Below, piece after piece: positions 1-35,327 of a stretch of DNA of 64,000 bases. The notes below the pieces were generated by a model. That model saw only the letters and a program-made list of their open reading frames with translations. It searched no databases and was not told the origin of the DNA. Position 1 is the first letter of the stretch. Each line of letters opens with the position of its first letter. Origin of the DNA: Octopus sinensis (Eukaryota); the NCBI RefSeq assembly GCF_006345805.1, contig NC_043026.1:13123579-13187578 (forward strand), read 5' to 3'. The position numbers and the translations under genes are program-made.

Positions 1-366
1 TTTCAAAGATTTAATCTTAATAGCAAAATTTATAAGGAGATCATCCACCAGATTTTAAAATTAGCAGAAAAATTGGAAAAGATATTTAGAAATTGTGCTG
101 AGATAGAATAATACAGTGAGTAAGAAAGAAAAAACAATTTCTCTTCGGCAGAGAAACTTTTACGAATGCAGCGGTATATGAAAGCGTATGAATAAAATGG
201 CGCGCATATTAATATTGTTCATATTGTATATAAAAGAATGTTAGTCAATATTCAGAGTGAAGAGTTATTTTGAAATTTAGAATGTTCCTAGAAGGCACTG
301 GAGTTCTTGGTAAAATTTACGTTAGGAAATAGCGTTAGTGAAACATCTCATTATATGATATTTCTG

Positions 367-806
367 GGATCTTTTCTGTTTGAACGAGAGTTTTTCTAGT
401 GGTGTCATATGAAACTGTCACCCATAATTATGACCCTAGTATCGATCTATCACATTTCAATCGGTTTTAGGGTTACGGTTAGTTAGGGTTAGGGTTAGGG
501 TTAGGGGTGGGGGGGAAGGGTATCTTTTTTTGTTCACAAATGTAAATAAACCCAATCTGTTTCTTAAACGAGGGACATATTCATACGGCACAGAAAGTTT
601 TTTTAGCTCAATAGATGTCATTGATTGGTTGAAATTGCAGAAATTTAAGAAAAAAACAACAAATATCTTACAAACTATAGAATTTTCTCAATAAAGCCAA
701 GAGAAAAAGATGTTTTATAAACAAATTCTACCAGTATACGAAGTTTAAAAGTGTTTAGTTACGTGGAAATTATTTTAAAAAACTGCCGTTCAAACCGAAA
801 AGATCC
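367..806 (+). mobile_element. Non-autonomous TIR element (GGATCTTTTC family, hAT-like MITE)
   Basis: TIRs GGATCTTTTCTGTTTGAAC...GTTCAAACCGAAAAGATCC. Perfect 8-bp TSD TATTTCTG (359-366 and 807-814). Internal short TTAGGG run. Confidence 0.85.
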
Positions 807-1798
807 TATTTCTGAAACCAAATCAAGTTTGGTGGTGGTCAGTTGTAACCATAAACCAATTCTTTTTTCAAAAAAATATCTGAGGTCTAAATTCATAAGT
901 AAGAGGTTTAAACGTTCAGATTCGCAGTGTGCGACATCAATAAACAGTGTTTAGTTCAATTTTAAGAGTGAAAATTAGTTTGAAATTTAGAATGTTCGTA
1001 GAAAGCTGTGATATTCTTAGTAAAATTTACGTTAGGAAATACTTTTAGTTAATTATCTAAAAAGTTACAGTATATTTATTAAACCAATATCAATTTGTAA
1101 TTATCGTGACGTATATTTGCCATTTCAATATGGCTAACCCCTAAGGGTGGATGCTACTGTAGTTTTTAGCCCCAGGAGGACACACTCCTCCAGCTGGCCA
1201 TAGACACACTTTCTGTGCCCTATCAGTATTTGCAAAGGGAAGTCATCCTTCCCGTCTTCAACTTATGATACACACGGACTCGAGTTTCGAGGTATTGACC
1301 TCTCGTCAGCGTGTGACAATTTGTAATTATATTAACAATTATTTAGTTGGAAACATTACATTTATCTATTTATTAATTTCTGCTGTGGGAATAAAATGTG
1401 AAAATAGTGTTTTTTCTTTTTGTTGTAGATGTATGAATTCATAAAATATACTTCTCTTGCAACTGTAAATGCATAAGTTCCAAAAATATATTCTTTTAGT
1501 GTAATATTCACATCGAAAGGATATTCTCACCGTAAGAAGATATTATCACGGTTCAATCTTTAGCTCTTTCAGTTATGTCATCATACGCTGGGGGTTTTGT
1601 TTCCAGCGATCTATTTCCGGATTACGACATCTGATATTCTGTATATTGATATACAAAAAGAAAATTCTGGCATTTTATATTCTGTATATGATATTAATGG
1701 ATGTTTTTAGTGTCACTTCTGGTTTGAATCGCAGAACCATTCCATGTTTCGAAGATCAATTTACCTTCATTCTTATACGACGTTCAACGCGGGCTAAC

Positions 1799-1905
1799 AT
1801 GTGTGTGTGTGTGTGTGTGTGTGTCCGTATGTGTATGTGTGTGTGTGTGCGTGTCGTATGTGGTGTGTGTGCGTGTGTGTGTGTGTGTGTGTGTGCGTGT
1901 GCGTA

Positions 1906-1936
<31 letters not shown>

Positions 1937-2062
1937 CCGTATGTGTGTATGTGTGTGTGTGTGTGTGTCCGTATGTGTATGTGTGTGTGTGTGCGTGTCC
2001 GTATGTGTGTGTGTGTGCGTGTCCGTATGTGTGTGTGTGTGCGTGTGTGTGTGTGTGTGTGT

Positions 2063-2099
<37 letters not shown>

Positions 2100-2100
2100 C

Positions 2101-2147
<47 letters not shown>

Positions 2148-2435
2148 TGTGCGTGTGTGTGCGTATGTGTGCATATGCGTGCATGTGTGTGCGTATGTGT
2201 GTGTGTGTGTGCGTGTGTGTGTGTGTGTGCGCGTGTGCGTGTGTGTGCGTATGTGCGCATATGCGTGCAGTGTGTGTGCGTATGTGTGCGTGTGTGTGTG
2301 TGCGTGTGTGCGTATGTGTATGTGTGTATGTCTGTGTGTGTGCGTGTGCGTATGTGTGTGTGTGGTGGTGTGTGTGTGTGTGTGGTGTGTGTGTGGCGTA
2401 TGTGTGTGTGTGTGTCGTGTGTGTGTGTGTGGTGT

Positions 2436-2470
<35 letters not shown>

Positions 2471-2770
2471 CGTGTGTGTGTGTGTGTGTGCGTGTGCGTG
2501 TGTGTGCGTATGTGTGCTTATGCGTGCATGTGTGTGCGTATGTGTGCGTGTGTGTGTGTGCGTGTGTGCGTATGTGTGTGTCTGTGTGCGTGAGCGTATT
2601 GTGCGTATGTGTGCATGTGTGTGCGTATGTGTGCATGTGTGTGCGTATGTGTGCTTATGCGTGCATGTGTGTGCGTATGTGTGCGTGTGTGTGTGTGCGT
2701 GTGCGTGTGTGTGTCTGTGTGCGTGAGTGTATGTGTGCGTATGTGTGCGTGTGTGTGTGTGTGTGTGTTT
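1799..2770. repeat. Compound (GT)n microsatellite
   Basis: About 970 bp of GT/GCGT/GTAT repeats. Source of the CV/HT pseudo-ORFs. Confidence 0.95.
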
Positions 2771-2878
2771 CTACATTACTGTGCATGTGACTGTGTTTAT
2801 GTATGTGTATTTGTATGTTCTTGGAGTTGTGCGTATTAATGTCGGCTTGCGCGGGCGCTTCTTTGAATTCCCATCCGT

Positions 2879-3748
2879 TTACCCAAGTGGACATATGCAT
2901 AGCGTACATCCTTTTGATGAAGCATTTTCCCTCCTCGGTTCAAACTTTAGCTGTTTGAGCAATGTCGACATAATCTGAGGCATTTGTTTCTCCAGTTCGG
3001 GATTGCGATCAGTGTTGAATTCTTCAGAAGCAACACAGTAAGAGACAGCGGTTAAAAGTGTCAGGAGTTCACGTTCAGTGCCATATTCACTCAAAGCTTT
3101 ACTTAATGTTTCCATAAAACACGTACCATTCGTTTTGTTCCTGAAAGACGAATATTTATTATAGGAGGAATGAAAGACCAACAGATCAGGCATAATTGGA
3201 ATATTGGATAGCGTTTCATTCACTTCTGTTTCAGGGCCATCAGTTACACAGAATCCTTCATCAATCTTTCCTCCACGACATGCTTGAACAAAAATTAATT
3301 TGGGTACTCCACTTAAAGATGGACATTTAACGGGTGTCAGGCAAGAAAGCAAATCATACAGTCCAACATCGCGGTCGTATGCACATAACTGATCGTTTTC
3401 CCTACCATGGCTCATAATTGCACAAACAAAGCAACCAACTGGATTACGAGTTCCAACTTTGTTAACATTTTTGAAAGTATTGAGCATTTCATCGGCTTTT
3501 TTATCTTTAAAAACTGTGACATCCCGTTTAGAAAATCCAAGTTTTATTAATGCCGCTTTAAAAGCTTTTGTATCTTTTGATGAGCCTTCACGATATAGAG
3601 AATCTTTGTTGAAATTTTCGTGGTTGAAGATGTAGGCTACAAGTCGCTTGTTATTTATATCATATTTAGCGAAACATTTACTAAGATCTTCCTTAGTTGG
3701 TGAATGGGGCTGATCGCTTGTCCCAACGTTTTCACCTCCATCTGCCAT
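2879..3748 (-). CDS. Effector-type caspase (caspase-3/7-like, short prodomain), copy A, 289 aa, intronless
   Basis: ATG at 3748 in ACAACCATGG context. Motifs NHENF..REGS, CAIMSHG, KLIFVQACRG, linker VTD/G, DLLVFHSSY..SFRN..GTCF, QMPQIMSTLLKQLKF. No CARD or DED. Ends GCTLCICPLG-stop. Confidence 0.92.
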   Translation of the reverse strand: MADGGENVGTSDQPHSPTKEDLSKCFAKYDINNKRLVAYIFNHENFNKDSLYREGSSKDTKAFKAALIKLGFSKRDVTVFKDKKADEMLNTFKNVNKVGTRNPVGCFVCAIMSHGRENDQLCAYDRDVGLYDLLSCLTPVKCPSLSGVPKLIFVQACRGGKIDEGFCVTDGPETEVNETLSNIPIMPDLLVFHSSYNKYSSFRNKTNGTCFMETLSKALSEYGTERELLTLLTAVSYCVASEEFNTDRNPELEKQMPQIMSTLLKQLKFEPRRENASSKGCTLCICPLG

Positions 3749-3789
3749 GGTTGTCAATGTAAGAAGTGATGAGCAGAACTGGTTCCGTT

Positions 3790-3836
3790 TATTATATATT
3801 TCTGTCCTCTCAGATTGCTATCAATGCGCATGCGTT
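3790..3836 (-). promoter_or_regulatory. Putative caspase A proximal promoter (TATA-like + TGCGCATGCGT NRF1-like motif)
   Basis: TATATAA about 50 bp and GCGCATGCG about 80 bp upstream of the ATG. Same arrangement upstream of all three intact caspase ORFs. Confidence 0.5.
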
Positions 3837-4229
3837 AACGAAATCCAACTCCTCGCTTCCAACTCAAAATATACAAATGCATCAGAAATTCTCACCGTAA
3901 TAATCTGCGTTTCTATTTAAGGACTCCACACCTTAAGGGGTTACACGAAAAACTATCTGAGGGCTGAACTCATAGGCGAGAGGGTTAAACGTTCAGATGC
4001 ACGGTGTTCGATATCGATAGAATGTCTTTCTTCCCTTATTTGGCATTTAAAATTTCGGCAATGTTTCGTTGATGGTTTAAATCTTCGGCAATTTCCGTAA
4101 GGAAATTTTTATTTCTTTATTTTATTTACGTCATTTTGTAGGCGACATTTGCTTAGAAATCGTTGAGGGAGGGGAAAAGTGAACCACACCGAAGAGTGCG
4201 TGCGCAACCATTCACACACACACACGCAG

Positions 4230-4273
<44 letters not shown>

Positions 4274-4532
4274 ATACGTACACACACATACACACACACG
4301 TACACATACAACCACTGACTTTTGTTGTGGATGAGTTGAATATTGAAACCCTCGCTCGCAGAATGCATGAATGTATTTAGGTGTATATGCGAGAAAATGG
4401 CTGTGAATGTGTGTGTATGTGTGTGTGTGTGTGTGTATGTGTGTGTGTGTGTGTGTGAATACAAATACATAAAACAGAACACGCTTGGGCACATGCATAA
4501 TGTTACACGCACACATACACACACACACACAC

Positions 4533-4566
<34 letters not shown>

Positions 4567-4664
4567 ACACACACACACACATAGACACGCCCGCGGGCAA
4601 AATATTTCTGCATTTTTACTCCTCAATGGCCGGAATTTTGAGCTTCAAAATACGGTGCCATCAA

Positions 4665-6030
4665 TTGCGCCGCCGGGACCTCTCCTTTCAGGGTCCTGAG
4701 GGAGATTCCAGAGTTCTACACATCTATCTCCAGCTCATCCCCCTGGCCACCACGGCTTCACCTGCCCTGATGCCTTTTACCATAAAACAAAATCTGCCTT
4801 ACGTAAACTTTCACTCTTCCTACTGCAAACATGTCATGCCCAGCCGAGACGCAATAAGGTGAAGAGGGCCTTCATACTAACCGCGACAGTGTAGCGCAGG
4901 GCCTCTACATTAGGGCTCAGGTCAGGGCTTTGATATGTCGGTGATCAAGAGCAGCGCATTCCGTTGAATAGTTGAGGCAAGTGAGCACTACACCATTTTA
5001 CAATTTCGTTTGCATTTTGTGGTCAGTGCCAAGGAATCTCCGGAGATGCTTCTCAAAGGAGGCAAAAGCCTTTCTGGCAGACTGTATTCACCACTTAACT
5101 TCCAAGTCAGAAATGTTAATACAAGTCAAAGCACTGTCCAGGGATAAAGCCCTCATGTGTACTTCAAAGGCTCCCCGTCTACTGTCAATGGCTCTGGAGC
5201 CCTCGATATAATATGGCAACTTGGTGGAATCTGGTAGAACGCTGAATTGTCTGCCGAGGGCAAAACCCTGACACGCATTTCCCTGATTTTGGTGTAAGTT
5301 CGAAGTCGATCCTGGCTGAAGGTCTTCCCATCTATTCTAGTACGGTTTAAATCGCCCTTTTGCTAGTTGACCATCATGGTGCAAGCACATCTGGACGCAA
5401 ACATACAAGAAAGCTTGGATAACACGCACCACTGCTTCTCACCGTGGTTGACTGCAAACGATTCCCTAAATGTCCGCCAACCAAGGCGAATCCTTCCGTC
5501 CCCGCGATGTCAACAACCTTCTCCAGCACTTACTAAAGTATTTCTCCCATAACTGTGTCTGTGTGAAGATTGTGTCCATCGTTCAACTCCCTCACCTGGT
5601 GCCACATTGATTCTCTGGTAAGACCTGCTCTGAGATGTCTTTTCAGCCGGTTGAGAATGATCTTCGTCAACAGCTCGCCAGTAATGGCCTCATCTCCATG
5701 CAATCATCTCAAATCCCCGCTCAATCTCAATTTTCGCTTTTATCTAATTTTTATTCGTGTCCCATACGGGTCCACAAGATTTCTACATACACCACTCCCT
5801 GGGCTTATAAAGGTACGAGAGTGTTTCACAATGGCGTCAATAAAGACAAGTGTTTGGAAATTGTGGTAACTGGCTCACTCGTCTGTAAATATATTGGACC
5901 CCAGTTCTACACTTTCCATTACGAACGCCTCGGCTGTGTCCAGCATCCAGTCTGGAACCTGTTGCAGCCTTCCTATCTTCTCAGAGCTCTCGTGTAAATC
6001 AACTCCCCGGAAAACACTGATAAACAGCAC
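4665..6030 (-). mobile_element. Degenerate RTE-clade LINE reverse-transcriptase fragment
   Basis: Broken-frame peptides KIILNRL, VLPENQCG, MDTIFT..QLWEK, RIDGKPFSL, HRHIKAL, RLGWA*HV, QILFYG match RTE ORF2 motifs. Many stops and frameshifts. Confidence 0.75.
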
Positions 6031-7309
6031 TAAATGCTTTCTAAGATGGCGTCGTCCACGGTGATGATGCAGACGACAATGACATCATATATATTGTACG
6101 TATTTCTTTAGTGCCACTTAGCTTTGTATTTCAAAACAGTTTCATTTTCCAAGGACAATTTACTTTCCCTGTAAAAATGACGGTCAATTGCATGATAAAC
6201 GCGATCGTACATGTGTATGTGTTGTGTGTGTAAGTGTGTGTGTGTGCGTGTGTGCTTGGTTATGTGTTTGTGTGAAACCTGTTTGGTTTTCTTAAGTGGG
6301 ATCGTGCTGGGATGGGTCTGGCCAGGGATTAAACTGGAGTATTTTGCTGGGATTAATCCAATGACTTAAAAGTAACATGTGGTTATGCCGCAGAAAAAAC
6401 GATTTTCCTTCATTTAGCTGTTATTTCTAGCATGTTGAATTTCTTTGAGGGGTCCATATTTTACATCTTCTGTTCGGGCGAAATCTACGCGGGCGCAAAG
6501 ACACATGTTCAATATGTACAACATTCGGAATTTCTTAGTTTTTGTAAGAAGAAAAATGTAGGAGGAATGACATTGGATCTTTCTTTCTGAAAGTTTAAAA
6601 TTGAAAAAATCTATCTTTCACATTCGAAATCTCCGTTGATTAAGCAAAAAAGTAAAATAAAAAACTGTTACCCCAAATCATAATCCTCGATAACAAAAAA
6701 ATAGGAATGCCTGAGATATTTTTGTAAAATAGAGAGGGTTGAGATAGCGCCGAACAGCGCCGATATTTGAATCAAAAAAGGGTCACACGAAAATATATCT
6801 GAAGGCTGCCCTCATAGGTAAGAGGGTTAAACGGTCAGATGCACGGTGCAAAATATCCGTAAAGAGTCTTTCTTTCAGTATTTGGAATTTAAAAATTCGG
6901 AAATGTTTCGTTGAGGGTCTAAATCTTCGGTAATTTCCGTCACAAAGTTTTATATATTTACTTTCTCGTTTCATGTCGTGTTGAAGGTGACATTTGCTTC
7001 GAAATCAGTGAGGGGGGTGAAAGGTGGAATAGAATGGAGGGCGCGTGCGCAATCGTACACAGATAGACACACGCACATACACACACACACACAAACACCA
7101 CACACAGATCCCTTTGAAATTTAGAATTTAACTATAAGGCACAGGTGTTCTTAATAAAGGCACAGGTGTTCTTATAAAATTCATGCTGAGAAATACTTTT
7201 AGTTAAGTATCACGTTCATGATCATTTTAGCAATTATTTAGCTGAAAATATTACATTTATCTATTTATCAATTTATGCTGTTGGTGTTACCTGTGGAAAT
7301 AGTCATGTT

Positions 7310-7485
7310 ATATATATGTATATATATATATGTATATATATATGTATCGAAATCTGCGATGAGGAATCGGTTTCTGACTGAAGAACGAAGGCTTTGAATG
7401 ACCCGTCTGTCTCTTATGTTCGTCCCTTCGTGTATTTCACGTTATTTATTTATGTAAAGGTTTATTATATATATATCTATATCTA

Positions 7486-7548
<63 letters not shown>

Positions 7549-7566
7549 GTATATATATATTATATA

Positions 7567-7614
<48 letters not shown>

Positions 7615-7640
7615 TATATATATATATACATGTATATACA
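7310..7640. repeat. (TA)n and (TATC)n microsatellites
   Basis: Direct reading. Mirrored at about 26,100-26,460. Confidence 0.9.
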
Positions 7641-7805
7641 TGAGGTTTTTAAAATCTACTCCGTTGCATCTCTGGATGTGTGTGTTTCTAAACCATATTC
7701 TTTTCGTACAATATGCAGATGCGTCAGAAATTCTCACCGTAAGAAGTTCCATATCTATTTAAGGGTCCCACACCAGAAATATTTTACTTCCTCTCTCAAA
7801 ATTTT

Positions 7806-8290
7806 AGGTTTTTGAGCAAGGTTGATATAATCTGAGGCATTCGCTTACAGCCATTATATTTTGAATTGGAATTCAAAAGAGGCAAGATAGTTTTAATCCG
7901 GATCTACCAGCATCGATTTCTTAATCTCACGACCAGCTTGACTAAAGATTAATTTAATTATTCCCTATAATGATGGACAGCAATCGAGTCCCGGGCAAGA
8001 AAGCAACGCATCTAGCTTCACTTCATCGTCGTATCCATATATAACATCGTTTTCTTCCCCATGATACAGAATTGCACAAATAAAGCAATCAATAGTGATA
8101 ACAGGATTATCTTCCTCAAATTCTTTCATCAAAAGACGAGGATTTAAAAAGAGGACCTCAGCTTTATACAGATGTAACAGTCGAACAAATGTTTGACTTC
8201 TGAATCTGTATAAAATCTGAGGTCATCATCTTGAAATCACGATTTTCTCAAGCCCTTTGAACATCTCCGTCTTTTGATGAAAGAATTTGA
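7806..8290 (-). pseudogene. Caspase pseudogene (left-arm copy)
   Basis: Minus strand reads CFICAILYHG...CPSL*GIIKLIFSQAGRE...MPQIISTLLK. In-frame TAG (7965-7967), catalytic Cys replaced by Gly, most of the small subunit deleted. Confidence 0.8.
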
Positions 8291-12925: not shown

Positions 12926-12980
12926 AGTTATATTCTAAATTTCAAAATAATTCTACACTCTGAAACTTGAACTAACAATT

Positions 12981-14126: not shown

Positions 14127-14172
<46 letters not shown>

Positions 14173-14620: not shown

Positions 14621-14652
<32 letters not shown>

Positions 14653-25439: not shown

Positions 25440-25930
25440 GATTATCTTGCTCAAATTCTTTCATCAAACGGAGATGTTCAAAGGGCTTGAGAAAATCGTG
25501 ATTTCAAGATGATGACCTCAGATTTTATACAGATTCAGAAGTCAAACATTTGTTCGACTGTTACATCTGTATAAAAGCTGAGGTCCTCTTTTTAAATCCT
25601 CGTCTTTGATGAAAGAATTTGAGGAAGATCATCCTGTTATCATTATTGATTGCTTTATTTGTGCAATTCTGTATCATGGGGCAGAAAACGATGTTATATA
25701 TGGATACGACGATGAAGTGAAGCTAGATGCGTTGCTTTCTTGCCCGGGACTCGATTGCTGTCCATCATTATAGGGAATAATTAAATTAATCTTTAGTCAA
25801 GCTGGTCGTGAGATTAAGAAATCGATGCTGGTAGATCCGGATTAAAACTATCTTGCCTCTTTTGAATTCCAATTCAAAATATAATGGCTGTAAGCGAATG
25901 CCTCAGATTATATCAACCTTGCTCAAAAAC
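25440..25930 (+). pseudogene. Caspase pseudogene (right-arm copy)
   Basis: IDCFICAILYHG (CAT GGG 25,675-80), TAG at 25,771, QAGRE at 25,798, MPQIISTLLK at about 25,898. Same lesions as the left copy. Confidence 0.8.
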
Positions 25931-26132
25931 CAAAATTTTGAGAGAGGAAGTAAATATTTCTGGTGTGGGACCCTTAAATAGATATGGAACTTCTTACGGT
26001 GAGAATTTCTGACGCATCTGCATATTGTACGAAAAGAATATGGTTTAGAAACACACACATCCAGAGATGCAACGGAGTAGATTTTAAAACCTCATGTATA
26101 TACATGTATATATATATATATATGTATATATA

Positions 26133-26212
<80 letters not shown>

Positions 26213-26214
26213 AC

Positions 26215-26285
<71 letters not shown>

Positions 26286-27739
26286 TAGATATAGATATAT
26301 ATATAATAAACCTTTACATAAATAAATAACGTGAAATACACGAAGGGACGAACATAAGAGACAGACGGGTCATTCAAAGCCTTCGTTCTTCAGTCAGAAA
26401 CCGATTCCTCATCGCAGATTTCGATACATATATATATACATATATATATATACATATATATAACATGACTATTTCCACAGGTAACACCAACAGCATAAAT
26501 GATAAATAGATAAATGTAATATTTTCAGCTAAATAATTGCTAAAATGATCATGAACGTGATACTTAACTAAAAGTATTTCTCAGCATGAATTTTTATTAA
26601 GAACACCTGTGCCTTTATTAAGAACACCTGTGCCTTATAGTTAAATTCTAAATTTCAAAAGGATCTGGTGTGTGTGTTTGTGTGTGTGTGTGTATGTGCG
26701 TGTGTCTATCTGTGTACGATTGCGCACGCGCCCTCCATTCTATTCCACCTTTCACCCACCTCACTGATTTCGAAGCAAATGTCACCTTCAACACGACATG
26801 AAACGAGAAAGTAAATATATAAAACTTCGTGACGGAAATTACCGAAGATTTAGACCCTCAACGAAACATTGCCGAATTTTTAAATTCCAAATACTGAAAG
26901 AAAGACTCTTTACGGATATTTTGCACCGTGCATCTGACCGTTTAACCCTCTTACCTATGAGGGCAGCCTTCAGATATATTTTCGTGTGACCCTTTTTTGA
27001 TTCAAATATCGGCGCAATTCGGTTGTACCCCTATCTCAACTCTCTCTATTTTTCAAAAATTCTCAGGCATTCCTATTTTTTGTTATCGAGGATTATGATT
27101 TGGGGTAACAGTTTTTTATTTTACTTTTTGCTTAATCAACGGAGATTTCGAATGTGAAAGATAGATTTTTTCAATTTTAAACTTTCAGAAAGAAAGATCC
27201 AATGTCATTCCTCCTACATTTTTCTTCTTACAAAAACTAAGAAATTCCGAATGTTGTACATATTGAACATGTGTCTTTGCGCCCGCGTAGATTTCGCCCG
27301 AACAGAAGATGAAAAATATGGACCCCTCAAAGAAAATTCAACATGCTAGAAATAACAGCTAAATGAGGGGAAAATCGTTTTTCTGCGGCATAACCACATG
27401 TTACTTTTAAGTCATTGGATTAATCCCAGCAAAATACTCCAAGTTTAATCCCTGGCCAGACCCATCCCAGCACGATCCCACTTAAGAAAACCAAACAGGT
27501 TTCACACAACACACAACCAAGCACGCACACACACACACACACTTCCACACACAACACATACACACATGTACGATCGCGTTTATCATGCAATTGACCGTCA
27601 TTTTTACAGGAAAGTAAATTGTCCTTGGAAAATGAAACTGTTTTGAAATACAAAGCTAAGTGGCACTAAAGAAATGCTGAAATGTCATACGTACAATATA
27701 TGATGTCATTGTCGTCTGCGTCATCGCCGTGGACGACGC

Positions 27740-29095
27740 CATCTTAGAAAGCATTTAGTGCTGTTTATCAATGTTTTCCGGGGAGTTGATTTACACGAGA
27801 GCCCTCAGAAGATAGGAAGGCTGCAACAGGTTCCAGACTGGATGCTAGACACAGCCGAGGCGTTCGTAATGGAAAGTGTAGAACTGGGGTCCAATATATT
27901 TACAGACGAGTGATCCAGTTACCACAATTTCCAAACACTTGTCTTTATTGACGCCATTGTGAAATACTCTCGTACCTTTATAAACCCACGGAGTGGTGTA
28001 TGTAGAAATCTTGTGGACCCGTATGGGACACGAATAAAAATGAGATAAAAGCGAAAGTTGAGATTGAGCGGGGATTTGAGATGATTGCATGGAGATGAGG
28101 CCATTACTGGCGAGCTGTTGACGAAGATCATTCTCAACCGGCTGAAAAGACATCTCAGAGCAGGTCTTACCAGAGAATCAATGTGGCACCGGGTGAGGGA
28201 GATGAACGATGGACACAATCTTCACACAGACACAGTTATGGGAGAAATACTTTAGTAAGTGCTGGAGAAGGTTGTTGACATCGCGGGGATGGAAGGACTC
28301 GCCTTGGTTGGCGGAGATTTAGGGAATCGTTTGCAGTCAACCACGGTGAGAAGTAGTGGTGCGTGTTATCCAAGCTTTCTTGTATGTTTGCGTCCAGATG
28401 TGTTGCACCATGATGGTCAACTAGCAAAAGGGCGATTTCAACCGTACTAGAATAGATGGGAAGCCCTTCAGCCTGGCTCAACTTCGTACTTACACCAAAA
28501 TCAGGGAAATGCGTTCAGGGTGCTGCCCTCGGCAGACAATTCAGTGTTCTACCAGATTCCACCAAGTTGCCATATTATATCGAGGGCTCCAGAGCATTTG
28601 AGGTAGACTGAGGGCTTTATCCCTGGACAGTGCTTTGACTTGTATTAACATTTCTGACTTGGAAGTTAAGTGGTGAATACAGTCTGCCAGAAAGGCTTTT
28701 GCCTCCTTTGAGAAGCATCTACGGAGATTCCTTGGCAGTGACCACAAAATGCAAGCGAAATTGTAAGGTGCAGTGCTCACTTGCCTCAACTATTCAACGG
28801 AATGCGTTGCTCTTGACCACCGACATATCAAAGCCCTGCCTGAGCCCTAATGTGGAGGCCCTGCGCTGCACTGTCGCGGTTAGTATGAAGGCCCTCTTCA
28901 CCTTATTGCGTCTCGGCTGGGCATGACATGTTTGCAGTAGGAAGAGTGAAAGTTTACGTAAGGCAGATTTTGTTTTATGGTAAAAGGCATCAGGGCAGGT
29001 GAAGCCGTGGTGGCCAGGGGATGAGCTGGAGATAGATGTGTAGAACTCTGGAATCTCCCTCAGGACCCTGAAAGGAGAGGGTCCCGGCGGTGCAA
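27740..29095 (+). mobile_element. Degenerate RTE-clade LINE fragment (mirror copy)
   Basis: Reverse complement of 4,665-6,030 with a small arm-specific deletion of about 30 bp near 28,605. Confidence 0.75.
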
Positions 29096-29212
29096 TTGAT
29101 GGCACCGTATTTTGAAGCTCAAAATTCCGGCCATTGAGGAGTAAAAATGCAGAAATATTTTGCGCGCGGTCGTGTCTATGTGTGTGTGTGTGTGTGTGTG
29201 GTTTGTTTGTAA

Positions 29213-29245
<33 letters not shown>

Positions 29246-29512
29246 TAAGTGTGTAAGTGTGTGTGTGGTGTGTGTGTATGTGTGTGTGTAACATTGTGTA
29301 TGTGCCCGAGCGTGTTCTGTTTTATGTATTTGTATTCACAACACACACACACACACACCATACACCACACACACACACACACATTCACAGCCATTTCTCG
29401 CACATACACCTAAATACATTCATGCATTCTGCGAGGGAGGGTTTCAATATTCAACTCATCCACAATAAAAGTCAGTGGTTGTATGTGTACGTGTGTGTGT
29501 ATGTGTGTGTAC

Positions 29513-29545
<33 letters not shown>

Positions 29546-29762
29546 TGTGTGTATGTATGTATGTATGTATGCATGTATGTATGTGTGTGTATGTGTGTGT
29601 GTAGTGTGTGTGTATGTGTGTGTGAGTGTGGTGGTGTATGTGTGTATGTATGTATGTAGTATGCATGTATGCATGTATGTATGTGTGTGGTGACTGTGTG
29701 TGTATGTGTATGTGTACGTGCGTGTATATGTGTGTGTGTATGTGTGTGTGTATGTGTGTGTG

Positions 29763-29802
<40 letters not shown>

Positions 29803-30185
29803 CGTGTGTGTGTGAATGGTTGCGCACGCACTCTTCGGTGTGGTTCACTTTTCCCCTCCCTCAACGATTTCTAAGCAAATGTCGCCTACAAAATGACGTA
29901 AATAAAATAAAGAAATAAAAATTTCCTTACGGAAATTGCCGAAGATTTAAACCATCAACGAAACATTGCCGAAATTTTAAATGCCAAATAAGGGAAGAAA
30001 GACATTCTATCGATATCATCGAACACCGTGCATCTGAACGTTTAACCCTCTCGCCTATGAGTTCAGCCCTCAGTTTTCGTGTAACCCTTAAGGTGTGGAG
30101 TCCTTAAGAAACGCAGATTATTACGGTGAGAATTTCTGATGCATTTGTATATTTTGAGTTGGAAGCGAGGAGTTGGATTTCGTTA

Positions 30186-30235
30186 ACGCATGCGCATTGA
30201 TAGCAATTTGAGAGGACAGAAATAATATATAATAA
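30186..30235 (+). promoter_or_regulatory. Putative caspase B proximal promoter
   Basis: ACGCATGCGCA at 30,186-30,196 and TATATAA at about 30,226. Confidence 0.5.
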
Positions 30236-30277
30236 ACGGAACCAGGTTCTGCTCATCACGTTCTTACATCGACTACC

Positions 30278-31255
30278 ATGGCAGATGGAGGTGAAAACGT
30301 TGGGACAAGCGATCAGCCCCATTCCCCAACTAAGGAAGATCTTAGTAAACGTTTCGCTAAATATGATATAAATAACAAGCGACTTGTAGCCTACATCTTC
30401 AACCACGAAAATTTCAAAAATAACCATCCTGAATCTCGTGAAGGCTCATCAAAAGATACAGAAGCTTTTATAGCGGCATTAATAAAACTTGGATTTTCTG
30501 AACGGGATGTCACAGTTTTTAAAGATAAAACAGCCGATGAAATGCTCAATGCTTTCAAAAATGTTAACGAAGTTGGAACTCGTAATCCAGTTGGTTGCTT
30601 TGTTTGTGCAATTATGAGCCATGGTAGGGAAAACGATCAGTTATGTGCATACGACCGCGATGTTGGACTGTATGATTTGCTTTCTTGCCTGACACCCGTT
30701 AAATGTCCATCTTTAAGTGGAGTACCCAAATTAATTTTTGTTCAAGCATGTCGTGGAGGAGAGATTGATGAAGGATTCTGTGTAACTGATGGCCCTGAAA
30801 CAGAAGTGAATGAAACGCTATCCAATATTCCAATTATGCCTGATCTGTTGGTTTTTCATTCCTCCTATAATAAATATTCGTCTTTCAGGAATAAACCGAA
30901 TGGTACGTGTTTTATGAAAACATTAAGTGAAGCTTTGATTGAATATGGCACTGAACGTGAACTCCTGACACTTTTAACCGCTGTCTCTTACTATGTTGCT
31001 TCTTCAGAATTCAAAACTTATCGCAATCCCGAACTGGAGAAGAAACAAATGCCTCAGATTATGTCGACATTGCTCAAACAGCTAAAGTTTGAACCGAGGA
31101 GGGAAAATGCTTCATCAAAAGCACGTACGCGAAGCAGAAGTCCACTTGAGGAAACGGATGGGAGTTCAAAGAAGCGCCCGCGCAAGCCGACATTAATACG
31201 CACAACTCCAGGAACATACAAATACACATACATAACACAGTCACATGCACAGTAA
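30278..31255 (+). CDS. Effector-type caspase, copy B, 325 aa, intronless
   Basis: SHG (30,617-30,625), QACRG (30,743-30,757), VTD/G linker. Basic tail RTRSRSP...SKKRPRKP. Confidence 0.92.
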   Translation: MADGGENVGTSDQPHSPTKEDLSKRFAKYDINNKRLVAYIFNHENFKNNHPESREGSSKDTEAFIAALIKLGFSERDVTVFKDKTADEMLNAFKNVNEVGTRNPVGCFVCAIMSHGRENDQLCAYDRDVGLYDLLSCLTPVKCPSLSGVPKLIFVQACRGGEIDEGFCVTDGPETEVNETLSNIPIMPDLLVFHSSYNKYSSFRNKPNGTCFMKTLSEALIEYGTERELLTLLTAVSYYVASSEFKTYRNPELEKKQMPQIMSTLLKQLKFEPRRENASSKARTRSRSPLEETDGSSKKRPRKPTLIRTTPGTYKYTYITQSHAQ

Positions 31256-31259
31256 TGTA

Positions 31260-31921
31260 GAAACACACCACACACACCACATGCACACATACGCACACAT
31301 ACACTCACGCACACAGACAACCACGCACACGCACACACACACACACGCACACATACGCACACACATGCACACACACACACATACGCACACACATGCACAC
31401 ACACACACATACGCACACACATGCACACATACGCACACACATGCACACATACGCACACACACACACACACACGCACACATGCACTCACACGCAGACCCAA
31501 CATACATGCACACACACACGTACACACCACACATACGCACAAACACGCACACACGCACAAACACACACACATATGCACACATACGCACACACACATACGC
31601 ACCACATGCACACACACACACATACGCACACACATGCACACACACACACACACGCAACACACACACACATAGCACACATACGCCACACACGCTCCGCAAC
31701 AACACACACACATACACATACGCACACATACGTCACACACACGCACACACACACATACACATACGCACCACACGAACACACGCACAACACACACATACGC
31801 ACACATACGCACACAACGCACACGCACACACACACACACACATACACACACGCACACACACACACACATACACACGCACACGCACAAACACACACATACG
31901 CACACATACGCACACACACGC

Positions 31922-31957
<36 letters not shown>

Positions 31958-31987
31958 ATACGGACACACACACACACACACACACAT
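31260..31987. repeat. Compound (CA)n microsatellite
   Basis: Mirror of 1,799-2,770 with a different length. Confidence 0.95.
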
Positions 31988-32346
31988 GCTAGCCCGCGTT
32001 GAACGTCGTATAAGAATGAAGGTAAATTGATCTTCGAAACATGGAATGGTTCTGCGATTCAAACCAGAAGTGACACTAAAAACATCCATTAATATCATAT
32101 ACAGAATATAAAATGCCAGAATTTTCTTTTTGTATATCAATATACAGAATATCAGATGTCGTAATCCGGAATAGATCGCTGGAACAAAACCCCCAGCGTA
32201 TGATGACATAACTGAAAGAGCTAAAGATTGAACCGTGAGAATATCTTCTTACGTGAGAATATCCTTTCGATGTGAATATTACACTAAAAGAATATATTTT
32301 TGGAACTTATGCATTTACAAGAGAAGATATTTTATGAATTCGTACA

Positions 32347-32757
32347 TACTCTTTACTCTCTTTTTACTCTTTCTCTTTACTCTTTTAGTTGTTTCAGTCA
32401 TTTTACTGCGGCCATGCTGGAGCAACCGCCTTTAGTCGAGCAAATCGACCCGGGACTTATCTTTGTAAGCCCAGTACTTATTCTATCGGTCTCTTTTGCC
32501 GAACCGCTAAGTTACGGGGACGTAAACACACCAGCATCGGTTGTTAAGCAATGCTAGGGGGACAAACACAGACACACACAAAACACACACATACATACAT
32601 ATATATATACATATATACGACAGGCTTCTTTCAGTTTTCCGTCTACCAAATCCACTCACAAGGCTTTGGTTCGGCCCGAGGCTATAGCGAAGACACTTGC
32701 CCAGATGCCACGCAGTGGGACTGAACCGGAACCATGTGGTTGGTAAACAAGCTACTT
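32347..32757 (-). mobile_element. SINE family A, right-arm specific
   Basis: Near-full-length minus-strand copy located where the left arm has about 700-1,431. Confidence 0.85.
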
Positions 32758-33064
32758 GGCTTTATTGAGAAAATTCTATAGTTTGTAAGATATTGTTTGT
32801 TTTTTTCTTCAATTTCTGCAATTTTCAACCATCAATGACGTCTATTGAGCTAAAAAAACATTCTGGCCGTATGAATATGTCCCTCCTTTAAGAAACAGAT
32901 TGGATTATTTCATTTGTGAACAAAAAAGATACCCTCCCCCTACCCCTACCCTAACCCTAAAACTAAAACGATTGAAATGTAATAGATCGATACTAGGGTC
33001 ATAATTATGGGTGACAGTTTCATATAACCCGCTAGAAAAAATGCCGTTCAAACAGAAAAGATCC
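32758..33064 (-). mobile_element. Truncated mirror of the 367-806 MITE
   Basis: Ends CAAACAGAAAAGATCC|CAGAAATA. Other end removed at the SINE junction. Confidence 0.8.
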
Positions 33065-33302
33065 CAGAAATATCATATAATAAGATGTTTCACTAACGCT
33101 ATTTCCTAACGTAAATTTCCAAGAACTCCAGTGCCTTCTAGGAACATTCTAAATTTCAATACTCTTCACACTCTGAATATTGACTAACATTCTTTTATAT
33201 ACAATATGAACAATATTAATATGCGCGCCATTTTATTTCATCGCTTTTCATATACCGCTGCATTCGTAAAATTTTCTCTGCCGAAGAGAAATTGTTTTTT
33301 TC

Positions 33303-34196
33303 GGATCTTTTCAATTCTGAACCAGTTTTTTCAAATTTTTTCCTACTGAACCAAACAATTTGAAACTTCGTATACTGGTAGAATGTGTCAAAGTAAACTT
33401 AATTGTAAACCAGATGAAAACGGAAACTGTAACTTCTAAGTTTAACGTTTTTAATATAATTAGAATTTTTAACCAATGAGATTCCCGTCATTCGGCTTTA
33501 TTTTATTTACTCCGTCTCGACCACCAATTTGGTGACGTATTAACATCTTAAATGTAAACAAGCCGCATGTCTCCGTGAAATCTCCTTCTAATTATTTAAC
33601 GTACTCATGTTTCCATGATCCTATAGTCAGCCACCTTCTAATGACATATTTAAAACTAGTTAATAAGCCACATGATTAAATTGAACTGTTTCCATTCTGT
33701 TAGTACTTGCTTTCGTTTGCTATTAAGAAGTGGCATCTCAGTGACGAGGCTTCTAACAAGATTTCGTTTCTAGCTAATGCGTTTCATTTCACTTATTGTA
33801 TTTATTTGTGCAAAAGGCAAGAAATTTAATATTAAAAAAGCAAGAGCTGGCAGAAACGTTAGCACGCCGGGAATGCGTAGCTGTATTTCGTCTGCCGTTA
33901 CGTTCTGTTGTTTGGTTTACAGTTTTCCGAACGTTAGTACGTCACAAAAGCGCTTTCTACGTCCACACTAATAGAATGCAGTCAAGTTTTACACATGAAA
34001 ACAAAAAAAACAAAATCTGATTGGTTAATTCGCAGTTTTAAATCTACGATTAAAGTCATAAAATAGATTTTTCTCAAATAAACTAGTTCCACAACCTGTG
34101 TCCTTGTTTTGCTAGACTCTATCAGCAATACGAAGTTTCAGAATATTTAAGTTAGTAGAAAGATCTGGTGTTCTGGCTTCAGAATTGAAAAGATCC
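33303..34196. mobile_element. 894-bp TIR element (GGATCTTTTC family), right-arm specific
   Basis: 19-bp TIR GGATCTTTTCAATTCTGAA. TSD GTTTTTT(T)C on both sides. Empty site GAAAAAAC at 128-135 in the left arm. Confidence 0.85.
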
Positions 34197-35327
34197 GTTT
34201 TTTCTTTCTTACTCACTGTATTATTCTATCTCAGCACAATTTCTAAATATCTTTTCCAATTTTTCTGCTAATTTTAAAATCTGGTGGATGATCTCCTTAT
34301 AAATTTTGCCTATTAAGATTAAATCTTTGAAATGCCGGCGAAAATATAATGTAGTTGCTTTTACGCTAGTTCTTAATTTCTTAAAATATTTAAATTTGAC
34401 TGAAAGCTTCTGCGATGTTCTATACCTGCAAGGCATCGTATTTTGAAGCTCAAAGTTCCGGCCATTGAGGAGTGAAGATGCAGAAATATTTTGCGCGCGG
34501 TCGTGTCTGTGTGTGTAAGTGTGTGTGTGTGTATATGTGTGTATGTGTGTGTGTATGTGTGTGTGTAACATTGTGCATGTGCCCGAGCGTGTTCTGTTTT
34601 ATGTATTTGTATTCACACACACACACACACACATACACACACACACACAAACACACACATACACACACAAACACACACACACATACACACACACACTTAC
34701 ACCACGCACAAACACACATACACACACATACACACACACACTTACACACGCACAAAACACATACACACATAACACACACAAACACACACCCATACACACA
34801 CATACACACACACAAACACCACACACAAACACACACACCACACACATACAACCAATCACACACACATACACCACAAACAGACACACATACACACAAACAC
34901 ACATACACACACCCACACACACACACACACACACCCACACATTCACAGCCATTTTCTCGCACATACACCTAAATGCATTCATGCATTCTGCGAGCGAGGG
35001 TTTCAATATTCAACTCATCCCACAAAAGTCAGTGGTTGTATGTGTGTACGTGTGTGTGTATGTAATGTCATGTATGTGTTGTGTGTATGTGTGTGTGTGT
35101 GTTGTGGTATGTGTGTGTGGTGTATGGTGTGGTGTGGTTGTGATGTGTTGTGGGTGTATGTGTGTGTGTATGTGTGTGTGTGTGATGTGTGTGTGTGTGT
35201 AAATGTGTGTGTGTATTGTGTGTTTGTGTATGTGGTGTGTGTGTAGTGTGTGTGTATGTGTGGTACGTATGTGTGTGTACGGTGTTTGTGATTGTGTGTG
35301 TGTGTACGTGTGTGTGTGTAATGTGTG

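What the first reader, a model, noticed from the sequence alone, without database searches (positions are those of the whole stretch)
1..34331. A palindromic caspase cassette of 34 kb or more: two active caspases facing outward with a dead caspase at the axis
Seen: arms of at least 14 kb are reverse complements around a 4.6-kb unique spacer. Layout: caspase A(-), pseudogene(-), [spacer: intact pseudo-caspase C(+)], pseudogene(+), caspase B(+). Known: palindromic arms permit arm-to-arm gene conversion (e.g. mammalian sex-chromosome palindromes), and inactive caspase homologues such as c-FLIP regulate active partners. Inference: this may be a self-contained enzyme-pair-plus-decoy cell-death or immune module. 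I do not recognise such a locus as described in molluscs.
Basis: partly seen in the sequence, partly recalled or inferred. Interest (0 to 1): 0.8.

Follow-up and report, generated by a model that had tools for sequence, protein, structure and literature searches.

The report
Octopus caspase palindrome with dead caspase
In the East Asian common octopus, a young inverted duplication places two working cell-death proteases back to back around an old, catalytically dead relative; all three share one conserved promoter and their proteins change unusually fast, which suggests an immune or cell-death gene cluster in an evolutionary arms race.

Summary
Window 1-14181 and 19512-35327 are inverted copies around a 5.3-kb spacer (not 4.6 kb). 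The layout is caspase A(-), relic(-), intact pseudo-caspase C(+), relic(+), caspase B(+). The window is Octopus sinensis chromosome CM016888.1.

The arms are imperfect: 85-93% identical with indels, about 1.5-4% substitutions. The left arm is orthologous to the O. vulgaris copy. The right arm groups with an unplaced O. sinensis scaffold that independently carries the right arm/spacer junction. The arms split about twice as long ago as the two species did. O. bimaculoides has the core A(-)...relic(-)...C(+) but no palindrome, so the dead caspase predates the palindrome by at least 34 My.

The locus is not self-contained. More caspases lie just left of the window, and the right arm ends at an assembly gap.

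New points:
- Every intact cluster member, dead or active, has the same roughly 155-190-bp TATA promoter with an invariant 20-mer.
- The A/B coding sequence diverges 6-7 times faster than flanking DNA, with dN/dS above 1.
- C keeps its ORF (neutral chance below 1%), its fold and the linker aspartate.

Best reading: a co-regulated, fast-evolving effector-caspase and decoy cluster. The palindrome is a recent by-product, with some arm-to-arm conversion.

The parts
1..14181 (-). Left arm of the inverted duplication (continues at least 0.3 kb beyond the window's left edge); orthologous to the O. vulgaris locus
   Evidence: Self-BLAST chain. Four-way alignment: L-V 0.0-1.0% substitutions in unique blocks. 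Site patterns LV|RU 82 against 7 and 3. Continuation beyond the window.
14182..19511 (.). Unique 5.3-kb spacer, bounded on both sides by (TA)n/(CA)n microsatellites; holds pseudo-caspase C, an 11-bp satellite, (AC)n and SINE-like copies
   Evidence: Window 14597-16401 is orthologous to the O. bimaculoides C1 region at 81%.
19512..35327 (+). Right arm (has a 0.9-kb insertion at 33301-34196 and a terminal satellite at 34614-35327); ends at the assembly gap
   Evidence: Near-identical (0-0.8% in most unique blocks) to unplaced scaffold VCDQ01006033.1, which also carries the unique sequence on the spacer side of the junction.
35328..35427 (.). Run of 100 N (scaffold gap) at the outer end of the right arm
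2879..3748 (-). Caspase A, single-exon CDS of 289 aa; effector-type, all catalytic and S1 residues present; C-terminal basic tail cut off by a stop
30278..31255 (+). Caspase B, single-exon CDS of 325 aa; effector-type, all catalytic and S1 residues present; C-terminal KKRPRK basic tail
14957..15676 (+). Pseudo-caspase C, intact single-exon CDS of 239 aa. The R179 loop is deleted, SHG has become NQD, and QACRG has become EAVE with a 3-aa deletion. R341 has become H. The linker Asp and the C-terminal strand are kept.
   Evidence: Structure model pTM 0.73 matching caspase-6/7/3. dN/dS about 2 against O. bimaculoides C1/C2. ORF retention under neutrality has P<1%.
7799..8132 (-). Relic pseudogene of a P0007-like caspase (only about aa 94-165 and 250-275 remain; in-frame stop; Cys to Gly)
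   Evidence: The same stop (CPSL*G) is present in O. bimaculoides.
25609..25942 (+). Mirror copy of the relic pseudogene
3749..3940 (-). Promoter of A: TATATAAT at 3791-3798, ATTGATAGCAAT at 3814-3825, invariant 20-mer at 3827-3846, distal box at 3881-3898
14765..14956 (+). Promoter of C with the same elements: distal box 14802-14819, 20-mer 14854-14873, ATTGATAGCAAT 14875-14886, TATATAAT 14905-14912
30086..30277 (+). Promoter of B with the same elements: distal box 30123-30140, 20-mer 30175-30194, ATTGATAGCAAT 30196-30207, TATATAAT 30226-30233
11821..12925 (.). 21-bp satellite array in the left arm (mirror copy at 20748-21940); other mirrored arrays at 9893-10826/22832-23848 and 1800-2768/31263-31986

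Best explanation
The region is the core of an octopod-specific cluster of single-exon, short-prodomain, effector-type (caspase-3/7-like) caspase genes on O. sinensis chromosome CM016888.1.

Shown:
- The ancestral core, shared with O. bimaculoides (split about 34 Mya), is an active A-type caspase(-), a relic pseudogene(-) and a catalytically dead caspase C(+), with A and C arranged head to head.
- In the O. sinensis/O. vulgaris lineage a block of at least 14.5 kb, carrying the A-type gene and the relic, was copied in inverted orientation to the far side of C. The inner breakpoints lie at (TA)n tracts. The copying happened roughly twice as long ago as the 2.5-My species split. The result is an imperfect palindrome.
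- Every intact cluster member, dead or active, keeps the same roughly 155-190-bp TATA promoter with an invariant 20-mer about 100 bp upstream of the ATG.
- The A/B coding sequence diverges 6-7 times faster than adjacent non-coding DNA, mostly by amino-acid changes. Judged by position relative to the catalytic motifs, many of these changes fall in the substrate-binding loops L1-L4.
- C keeps its ORF, predicted fold, inter-subunit aspartate and C-terminal strand.

Inferred:
- The genes are co-regulated and under diversifying selection, most plausibly in host defence or a conflict with pathogen-encoded caspase inhibitors.
- C acts without catalysis, either as a heterodimer partner or as a competing cleavage substrate or inhibitor sink that tunes A/B-type caspases.
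- The palindrome is a by-product of cluster turnover. It added a second active copy and allows occasional arm-to-arm conversion. It is not the functional unit.
For: - Palindrome geometry.
- Species and context.
- Tree ((L,V),(R,U)): informative sites 82 against 7 and 3; singletons L39, V35, R50, U30.
- Three distinct arm versions exist in one assembly. U carries the unique right-side spacer junction.
- O. bimaculoides has the core but no large inverted repeat, and shares the relic's stop codon.
- Catalytic table.
- Effector type: the best PDB hits are Sf-caspase-1 and caspase-7/3/6, and Pfam finds no CARD or DED.
- Promoter: the -150..-1 region is 83-94% identical across paralogues and species, against 63-70% for the C versus A-type CDS body. 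The 20-mer occurs once per intact gene in three species and is absent from the relics and from an unlinked caspase.
- Fast CDS: L-V 31/819 against 27/5042 (p=1e-12); R-U 22/819 against 21/5042 (p=7e-9); promoter 0/198.
- dN/dS: A-V 2.6, B-V 3.35 (p=0.04); only 5 of 48 variable codons are synonymous (p=0.036).
- C against C1/C2: dN/dS about 2 (p=0.006 and 0.01).
- Neutral chance of an open ORF: 0.7-0.8%.
- C model: pTM 0.73, matching caspase-6/7/3 at TM about 0.65.
- The linker Asp is invariant.
- Conversion traces: codons 31-34 are shared and derived in A and B only; divergence heterogeneity p=7e-4; the 274-aa gene's 5' end is 99-100% identical to A/B.
- Dates and heterozygosity: PMC10700109.
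Against: - No expression data were available for A, B or C. The exact C protein is on no other public contig.
- No B-like or C-like protein is annotated in O. vulgaris, although the dating predicts that the right-type arm existed in the common ancestor. I could not read the O. vulgaris sequence beyond the left arm.
- The full palindromic adjacency rests on one PacBio-era contig, whose right arm ends at a gap. Only 45 bp of the spacer side of the junction could be seen in the second scaffold.
- C's dN (0.26) is close to the interspecies non-coding divergence, so dN/dS above 1 partly reflects a low dS.
- Synonymous changes are also elevated in R-U (5 against 0.75 expected), so mutation or ectopic conversion contributes to the fast CDS change.
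- Heterodimerisation, decoy action and any immune role are inference only.
Confidence: 0.6

Rival explanations
1. One reading: the palindrome itself is the functional unit. On this view it is a self-contained module of two active caspases plus a decoy at the axis, kept symmetrical by arm-to-arm gene conversion.
For: The layout is as described. A and B share a derived micro-tract at codons 31-34 that is absent from U, V and the outgroup. A tract around the relic is 99-100% identical between the arms. C shares the A/B promoter.
Against: Arm identity is only 85-93%, with 1.5-4% substitutions. O. bimaculoides has the active-plus-dead pairing without a palindrome. More caspases with the same promoter lie just outside, namely the 274-aa gene and P0007, with P0008 on an unplaced scaffold. 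No B-like gene is annotated in O. vulgaris.
Confidence: 0.1
2. Assembly artefact: the right-type arm and caspase B are real sequence, but their inverted placement next to the spacer is a mis-join in the PacBio/Hi-C assembly. The cause would be either a divergent haplotype or a dispersed paralogue folded back at a repeat.
For: The right arm ends at an N gap in a satellite. Repeats ((AC)n and a SINE) lie between C and the right junction. The O. sinensis assembly has many unplaced scaffolds and only 86% of sequence in chromosomes (PMC10700109). O. bimaculoides has P0007-like genes, not an inverted arm, to the right of C, and similar genes sit on an unplaced O. sinensis scaffold. No B-like protein is annotated in O. 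vulgaris.
Against: Three distinct versions (L, R, U) exist, which is too many for a single-copy diploid locus. R and U form a clade older than the species split. U independently contains the right arm joined through (TA)n to the same unique spacer-side sequence. There is no N gap anywhere between position 1 and 35327. A and B share a derived tract, as expected for linked copies.
Confidence: 0.15
3. Neutral birth and death: C is a decaying, non-functional copy that happens to be still open. The fast change in A/B reflects relaxed constraint or ectopic gene conversion, not selection. No decoy function exists.
For: dN/dS is about 1 for A/B against O. bimaculoides. C's dN is close to the neutral divergence. 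Several neighbours have eroded S1 or catalytic residues. There are clear conversion events. Synonymous changes are also elevated in R-U.
Against: The chance of open ORFs under random substitution is 0.7-0.8% for C-C1 and 0.25% for A-P0004, before counting frameshifts. C's promoter is about 90% conserved while its coding body is 63% identical to A. Nonsynonymous changes exceed the flank-rate expectation eight-fold, 28 against 3.4. Only 7 of 19 polarised changes exist in the sampled paralogues. Structural residues, the linker Asp and the C-terminal strand are conserved.
Confidence: 0.1

Closest known systems
Dipteran 'caspase-like decoy' paralogues (Aedes aegypti CASPS18/CASPS19; Bryant et al. 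2010, as described in PMC3141678 and PMC7768685)
   Same: An enzymatically inactive, short-prodomain caspase homologue that arose by duplication of an active effector-type caspase, lost critical residues, and is proposed or shown to regulate its paralogue.
   Different: A different phylum and an independent origin. Here the dead lineage is at least 34 My old and is itself duplicated in O. bimaculoides. It shares an almost invariant promoter with the active genes and sits at the axis of a young palindrome. No biochemical test has been done.
c-FLIP(L)/CFLAR next to CASP8/CASP10 in vertebrates (PMC11121540, PMC11994107)
   Same: A pseudo-caspase with a caspase fold and mutated catalytic residues, encoded adjacent to its active paralogue. 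It acts by heterodimerisation and is itself cleaved at a linker aspartate.
   Different: c-FLIP is initiator-type with tandem DEDs and works at the DISC. C has no DED or CARD, only a prodomain of about 35 residues, and is effector-type, where dimers are constitutive. It is not a member of that family.
C. elegans CSP-3 (and CSP-2), caspase homologues without an active site (PMC3591282)
   Same: A caspase paralogue lacking the active site, reported to restrain the active caspase.
   Different: Per my own recollection, CSP-3 corresponds to the small subunit only. Its anti-apoptotic role was not reproduced in PMC3591282. C is a full-length p20+p10 homologue.
Molluscan effector-caspase expansions by tandem or segmental duplication (PMC11543851)
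   Same: A lineage-specific expansion of caspase-3/6/7-like genes in molluscs. The tree in that paper includes O. bimaculoides, O. sinensis and O. vulgaris proteins.
   Different: That work concerns long-linker caspases in bivalves and gastropods. It describes no octopod pseudo-caspase lineage, shared promoter, palindrome or rate excess.
Large genomic palindromes maintained by arm-to-arm gene conversion (primate sex-chromosome ampliconic palindromes; own knowledge)
   Same: Inverted arms of more than 10 kb around a unique spacer, with genes in the arms and some evidence of arm-to-arm sequence exchange.
   Different: Those arms are more than 99.9% identical and conserved across species. Here the arms differ by 1.5-4% in substitutions plus many indels, and the structure is absent from O. 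bimaculoides.

Membership tests
Caspase family (MEROPS C14A / Pfam PF00656) | Peptidase_C14 domain detectable by profile | tested here: met
   A 5.9e-44, B 1.5e-44, C 1.3e-15, all above the gathering score.
Caspase family (active enzyme) | Catalytic dyad His237/Cys285 (SHG, QACxG) and S1 pocket Arg179, Gln283, Arg341 | tested here: met
   Met for A, B, U, O. vulgaris P0003 and O. bimaculoides P0004. For C and O. bimaculoides C1/C2 the feature is not met: the R179 loop is deleted, H237 is Q/Y/H, C285 is V/S/S and R341 is H/S/S.
Effector (executioner) caspases | Short prodomain without CARD or DED; closest to caspase-3/6/7 | tested here: met
   About 35 residues precede the p20. Pfam finds only PF00656. 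The best solved relatives are Sf-caspase-1 and caspase-7/3/6. The C model matches caspase-6/7/3 best.
Pseudo-caspase / caspase-like decoy | Caspase fold retained, catalytic residues lost, ORF maintained | tested here: met
   Model pTM 0.73, Foldseek E=1e-13 and TM about 0.65 to caspases. Residue table. ORF retention P<1% under neutrality. Orthologous lineage in O. bimaculoides.
Pseudo-caspase / caspase-like decoy | Binds or modulates an active paralogue (heterodimer, competing substrate) | not testable with these tools
   Indirect evidence only: a conserved C-terminal strand, an invariant linker Asp and a shared promoter.
c-FLIP family | Tandem death-effector domains N-terminal to the pseudo-protease domain | tested here: not met
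   No DED is found by Pfam. C is 239 aa with a prodomain of about 35 residues.
Conversion-maintained genomic palindrome | Inverted arms around a unique spacer | tested here: met
   Arms 1-14181 and 19512-35327, spacer 5330 bp.
Conversion-maintained genomic palindrome | Near-identity of arms (over 99.9%) through ongoing gene conversion | tested here: not met
   Gapped identity is 85-93%. L-R substitutions are 1.55% in unique non-coding DNA and 4.1% overall. Only local tracts reach 99-100%.
Conversion-maintained genomic palindrome | Evidence of any arm-to-arm exchange | tested here: inconclusive
   The codon 31-34 tract is shared and derived in A and B only. The ratio of internal to terminal branch sites is heterogeneous (p=7e-4). 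However, LR|UV sites number only 7 against 82.
Conversion-maintained genomic palindrome | Conservation of the palindrome across species | tested here: not met
   There is no large inverted repeat in the orthologous 33.7 kb of O. bimaculoides. O. vulgaris could not be read beyond the left arm.

The most novel reading that the evidence does not exclude
Octopods carry a co-regulated battery of fast-diversifying effector caspases and dedicated pseudo-caspases, all driven by one conserved promoter. It would function as an innate-immune or cell-death arms-race system. The dead members would serve as decoys for pathogen caspase inhibitors, or as partners that alter specificity. Inverted duplication and ectopic conversion would generate new allelic and paralogous variants. 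That would make it an invertebrate counterpart of rapidly evolving vertebrate inflammatory-caspase and decoy loci.
Probability: 0.25. Interest if true: 0.7.

Novelty: new variant of a known kind. Interest (0 to 1): 0.5.

Why it matters
Caspase pseudo-enzymes that regulate active paralogues are known from vertebrates (c-FLIP), and reported from nematodes and mosquitoes. No cephalopod example has been described in the literature I could search. This locus offers a compact, testable case with three parts. The dead caspase has been kept for at least 34 My. Its promoter is almost identical to that of its active neighbours. The active genes change 6-7 times faster than the surrounding DNA between sister species, and apparently between alleles. 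If the inference holds, it points to a lineage-specific cell-death or immune module in an animal group whose immunity is poorly understood. It would also give a natural system for studying how effector-caspase decoys work. The palindrome is also a dated example (about 5 My old, imperfect) of how such clusters grow.

Tried and rejected
- Synteny anchor for O. vulgaris through the flanking C2H2 zinc-finger gene. The search was swamped by vertebrate zinc fingers and returned no octopus protein. I could therefore not measure whether O. vulgaris has room for a right arm.
- Exact-protein look-ups for C and B in other assemblies or transcripts. C is on no other contig and B is only on the reference contig, so there is no expression evidence.
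- P0009 of O. vulgaris as a possible neighbour. It lies 3.3 Mb away and is irrelevant.
- P0008 scaffold as a possible continuation of the right arm beyond the gap. It holds two further P0007-like caspases but is not continuous with U.
- Carriage by a transposon or virus. The arms contain no other ORFs, only satellites and microsatellites. Rfam and tRNA scans were empty. I rejected this idea.
- Ectopic gene conversion as the sole cause of fast CDS change. Only 7 of 19 polarised changes are present in the sampled paralogues. I rejected it as the main cause but kept it as a contributor.
- R/U as the alternative haplotype of L. I rejected this because there are three versions, R and U form a clade older than the species split, and U has the right-side junction.
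- Promoter motif resemblances (kappaB-like GGATTTCG, GATA-like TGATAG, NRF1-like GCATGCGC). These are recalled from memory only, were not tested, and are not used as evidence.

Full report
**1. Observation**

The inverted repeat is real. An inverted-repeat scan and a self-BLAST give a single anti-diagonal chain from window 129-14181 to 33300-19512. It falls into five blocks of 85-93% gapped identity, with local tracts of 99-100% (7271-7559, 7799-8133, 8273-8695). The unique spacer is 14182-19511, which is 5330 bp. The window has one N run, at 35328-35427.

- A: CDS 2879-3748(-), 289 aa.
- Relic: 7799-8132(-).
- C: CDS 14957-15676(+), 239 aa, intact.
- Mirrored relic: 25609-25942(+).
- B: CDS 30278-31255(+), 325 aa.

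All three intact genes are single coding exons. Pfam gives Peptidase_C14 for A, B and C. The closest solved structures to B are Spodoptera caspase-1 and caspases 7, 3 and 6. No CARD or DED was found. They are therefore short-prodomain, effector-type caspases.

**2. Source and neighbours**

Protein searches and contig look-ups show that the window is Octopus sinensis CM016888.1, at window position + 13,123,578. The cluster continues to the left of the window. A 274-aa caspase(-) lies 1-1.9 kb outside it, and P0007(-) lies 8.7-14 kb outside. To the right, after the gap, come C2H2 zinc-finger genes. The left arm also continues beyond the window edge. That continuation matches 34197-34435 on the right at 96.7%. 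The palindrome is therefore at least 35.6 kb long, and its right arm ends in a satellite at a contig end.

**3. Real or mis-assembled?**

I aligned four copies of the arm:
- L: the left arm.
- R: the right arm.
- U: O. sinensis unplaced scaffold VCDQ01006033.1, which carries P0002.
- V: O. vulgaris OX597841.1, which carries P0003.

Substitution-only divergence is 0.0-1.0% for L-V in unique blocks, 0-0.8% for R-U in most blocks, and 4.1% overall for L-R. In 5 kb of unique non-coding DNA, L-R is 1.55%. Parsimony-informative sites give LV|RU 82, LR|UV 7 and LU|RV 3. Singletons are L39, V35, R50 and U30.

Three conclusions follow. L is the orthologue of the O. vulgaris copy. R and U form a clade whose internal difference is in the range of octopus heterozygosity (1.22% in O. 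vulgaris, PMC10700109). The L/R split is about twice as deep as the 2.5-My species split.

Three distinct versions in one assembly cannot be two alleles of a single-copy locus. At base level, both inner arm ends are (TA)n tracts. V follows L into a SINE-like element on the left side of the spacer. U's innermost 45 bp equal the unique sequence on the right side of the spacer. The right junction therefore exists in two independently assembled sequences.

Some weaknesses remain:
- The complete L-spacer-R path rests on one contig.
- The right arm ends at a gap.
- Repeats lie between C and the right junction.
- No B- or C-like protein is annotated in O. vulgaris.
- I could not read further into U or V.

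I put about 15% on an artefactual adjacency.

**4. History**

The orthologous 33.7 kb of O. bimaculoides reads P0004 A-type(-), relic(-), C1(+), C2(+), a fragment(-), then a P0007-like active caspase(+). The relic has the same in-frame stop (CPSL*G). There is no large inverted repeat. Window 2925-4588 aligns to the P0004 region and 14597-16401 to the C1 region. The head-to-head pairing of an active and a dead caspase, with the relic between them, is therefore at least 34 My old. The palindrome is a later addition.

The relic covers only about residues 94-165 and 250-275 of a P0007-like caspase. The arms hold no other ORFs and no Rfam or tRNA hits.

**5. The proteins**

A residue table shows that A, B, U, P0003 and P0004 keep R179, H237, Q283, C285 and R341 (caspase-1 numbering, assigned by alignment).

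The C lineage (C, C1, C2) shares an 11-residue deletion that removes R179 and a 3-residue deletion after the former QACRG. It has H237 as Q/Y/H, C285 as V/S/S and R341 as H/S/S.

Other neighbours are partly eroded:
- The 274-aa gene and O. vulgaris P0005: Q283A, R341 lost.
- P0007: Q283E, R341I.
- P0025: C285S.

The inter-subunit aspartate (B D171) is invariant in all 13 aligned proteins, including the dead ones. The C-terminal strand is among C's best conserved parts. An AlphaFold model of C (25-sequence alignment; pLDDT 71.5, pTM 0.73) matches caspase-6/7/3/8 structures at E=1e-13 and TM about 0.65.

An exhaustive search of 1.84 billion representatives found no other cluster of the C type. 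It did turn up further pseudo-caspases: P0034, P0036, and an insect protein (P0033) that fuses a dead domain with a live one.

**6. Shared promoter**

I aligned 400 bp upstream plus the CDS of seven genes from two species. The 150 bp before the ATG is 83-94% identical in every comparison. Examples are C against A at 90%, O. bimaculoides C1 against P0004 at 94%, and O. sinensis C against O. bimaculoides P0004 at 89%. By contrast, the coding bodies of C-type and A-type genes are 63-70% identical, and their distal upstream regions are unalignable (33-41%).

The block contains four elements:
- TATATAAT at -50/-52.
- ATTGATAGCAAT at -77/-82.
- The invariant 20-mer GGATTTCGTTAACGCATGCG at -98/-103.
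- A further box at -150/-155.

The 20-mer occurs three times in the window, once before each of A, C and B, against 0 expected by chance. It occurs once before every intact cluster gene in the fetched loci of three species. It is absent from the relics and from an unlinked caspase locus.

Conservation across both paralogues and species shows constraint, not only conversion. The simplest reading is co-regulation. This is an inference.

**7. Rates**

Between A and its O. vulgaris orthologue, the CDS differs at 31/819 sites against 27/5042 in adjacent non-coding DNA (7-fold, p=1e-12). The promoter differs at 0/198. R against U gives 22/819 against 21/5042 (6-fold, p=7e-9). From the flank rate, 3.4 replacement changes are expected in A-V and 28 are seen.

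Nei-Gojobori dN/dS values:

| Pair | dN/dS | Note |
|---|---|---|
| A-B | 1.6 | |
| A-V | 2.6 | |
| B-V | 3.35 | p=0.04 |
| U-V | 3.8 | |
| A/B vs O. bimaculoides | about 1 | |

Only 5 of 48 variable codons are synonymous (p=0.036). Many changes are K/E swaps. By their position relative to the catalytic motifs, many lie in loops L1 (codons 48-54), L2 (163-169), L3 (207-212) and L4 (241-257). This loop assignment comes from alignment and my own knowledge of caspase-3, not from a structure of A or B.

C against C1 and C2 gives dN/dS of about 2 (p=0.006 and 0.01). There is a caveat. C's dN of 0.26 is near the interspecies non-coding divergence, so part of that ratio reflects a low dS. I therefore simulated random substitution. 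The ORF stays open in only 0.7-0.8% of trials along the C-C1 path and 0.25% along the A-P0004 path, before counting frameshifts. Selection is therefore keeping these proteins while their surfaces change.

Ectopic conversion contributes to the change:
- The 274-aa gene's upstream 400 bp is 99-100% identical to A/B and its first 105 nt of CDS 94%, against 76% for the rest of the CDS.
- B/U-type codons 48-54 recur in that gene.
- Synonymous changes are elevated in R-U.

However, only 7 of 19 polarised changes exist in the sampled paralogues.

**8. Arm-to-arm exchange**

A and B share a derived complex change at codons 31-34 (INN- in place of MDDK). It is absent from U, V, the 274-aa gene and the outgroup. 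The ratio of internal-branch to terminal-branch sites varies along the arm: 5:14 around the relic against 31:11 nearer the caspase gene (p=7e-4). Exchange therefore happens, but far too rarely to homogenise the arms.

**9. Comparison with known systems**

- Effector-caspase expansion by tandem and segmental duplication is established in molluscs (PMC11543851).
- Pseudo-caspases next to active paralogues are known, for example cFLIP beside CASP8 (PMC11121540).
- Active-site-less CSP-3 occurs in C. elegans, although its role was not reproduced (PMC3591282).
- Dipteran caspase-like decoys that arose by duplication are the closest functional analogue (Bryant et al. 2010, as described in PMC3141678 and PMC7768685).

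Searches of the held literature found no description of this locus, of an octopod pseudo-caspase lineage, or of the shared promoter.

I therefore class it as a new variant of a known kind. The genes themselves are already annotated as caspase-3/7-like. What is new is the conserved dead lineage, the common promoter, the rate excess and the young palindrome.

**10. Verdict**

Nothing in this work called for a referred step.

Noticed in passing
L001 14777-15601 (about 1.0-1.9 kb left of window position 1, minus strand in window sense): A 274-aa caspase neighbour with Q283A and R341 lost, so an altered S1 pocket. Its upstream 400 bp is 99-100% identical to A/B and its first 105 nt of CDS 94%, against 76% for the rest of the CDS. 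Its O. vulgaris orthologue P0005 differs in that 5' part, which points to recent ectopic gene conversion of the promoter and 5' CDS.
   Followed up: partly
window 2879-2940 versus 31110-31255: After the caspase domain, B (like U, and like the O. vulgaris gene read as a single exon) carries a basic tail ...KARTRSRSPLEETDGSSKKRPRKPT that resembles a nuclear localisation signal. A has a stop (GAA to TAA) that removes it. The two 'active' copies may therefore differ in localisation. This is untested.
   Followed up: no
L009 (O. sinensis unplaced scaffold VCDQ01006068.1) 1756-2544 and 10001-10852: Two more tandem P0007-like caspase genes (262 aa, and P0008 of 283 aa) on an unplaced 44-kb scaffold, about 82% identical in DNA to the P0007-like gene that lies right of C in O. 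bimaculoides. They may belong beyond the assembly gap.
   Followed up: partly
window 5832-6273 versus 10771-11196; window 8143-11843 versus O. bimaculoides merged locus 18471-13337: A nested, older inverted repeat (about 68% identical) lies inside each arm. The arm interior is inverted relative to O. bimaculoides, so the locus has a history of repeated inversions.
   Followed up: no
window 43023-44159(+), 57621-58361(-), 62289-63086(+): Three single-exon C2H2 zinc-finger ORFs (Pfam zf-C2H2 and zf-H2C2_2). They are typical of the large octopus ZNF expansion and are unrelated to the caspases.
   Followed up: partly
window 13971-14400, 18953-19243, 32378-32757, 37246-37614, 40369-40673, 50285-50650, 50785-51166: Copies of one SINE-like element of about 350-400 bp (75-93% identical). 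One copy abuts the left arm/spacer junction and another sits where right-arm homology is interrupted.
   Followed up: no
window 11821-12925 and 20748-21940; 9893-10826 and 22832-23848: Mirrored satellite arrays inside the arms, with units of 21 bp and 51-53 bp. Copy number and phase differ between the arms, which accounts for much of the indel divergence.
   Followed up: no
window 46001-48000: A G+C-richer stretch with a very strong negative GC skew (-0.50) and an internally repetitive ORF at 46374-46787. Its nature was not determined.
   Followed up: no
proteins P0033, P0034, P0036 (not in the window): Other natural pseudo-caspases turned up. P0034 is a Logan transcript-sized contig of unknown species (ASRG, no His, L1 deleted). 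P0036 is an O. bimaculoides 'caspase-6' without QACRG. P0033 is a leafhopper protein that fuses a dead and a live caspase domain in one chain.
   Followed up: partly
window 3814-3846, 14854-14886, 30175-30207: The invariant promoter core reads GGATTTCGTTAACGCATGCGCATTGATAGCAAT. From memory, parts of it resemble kappaB-like, NRF1-like and GATA-type sites. No motif library was available to test this.
   Followed up: no
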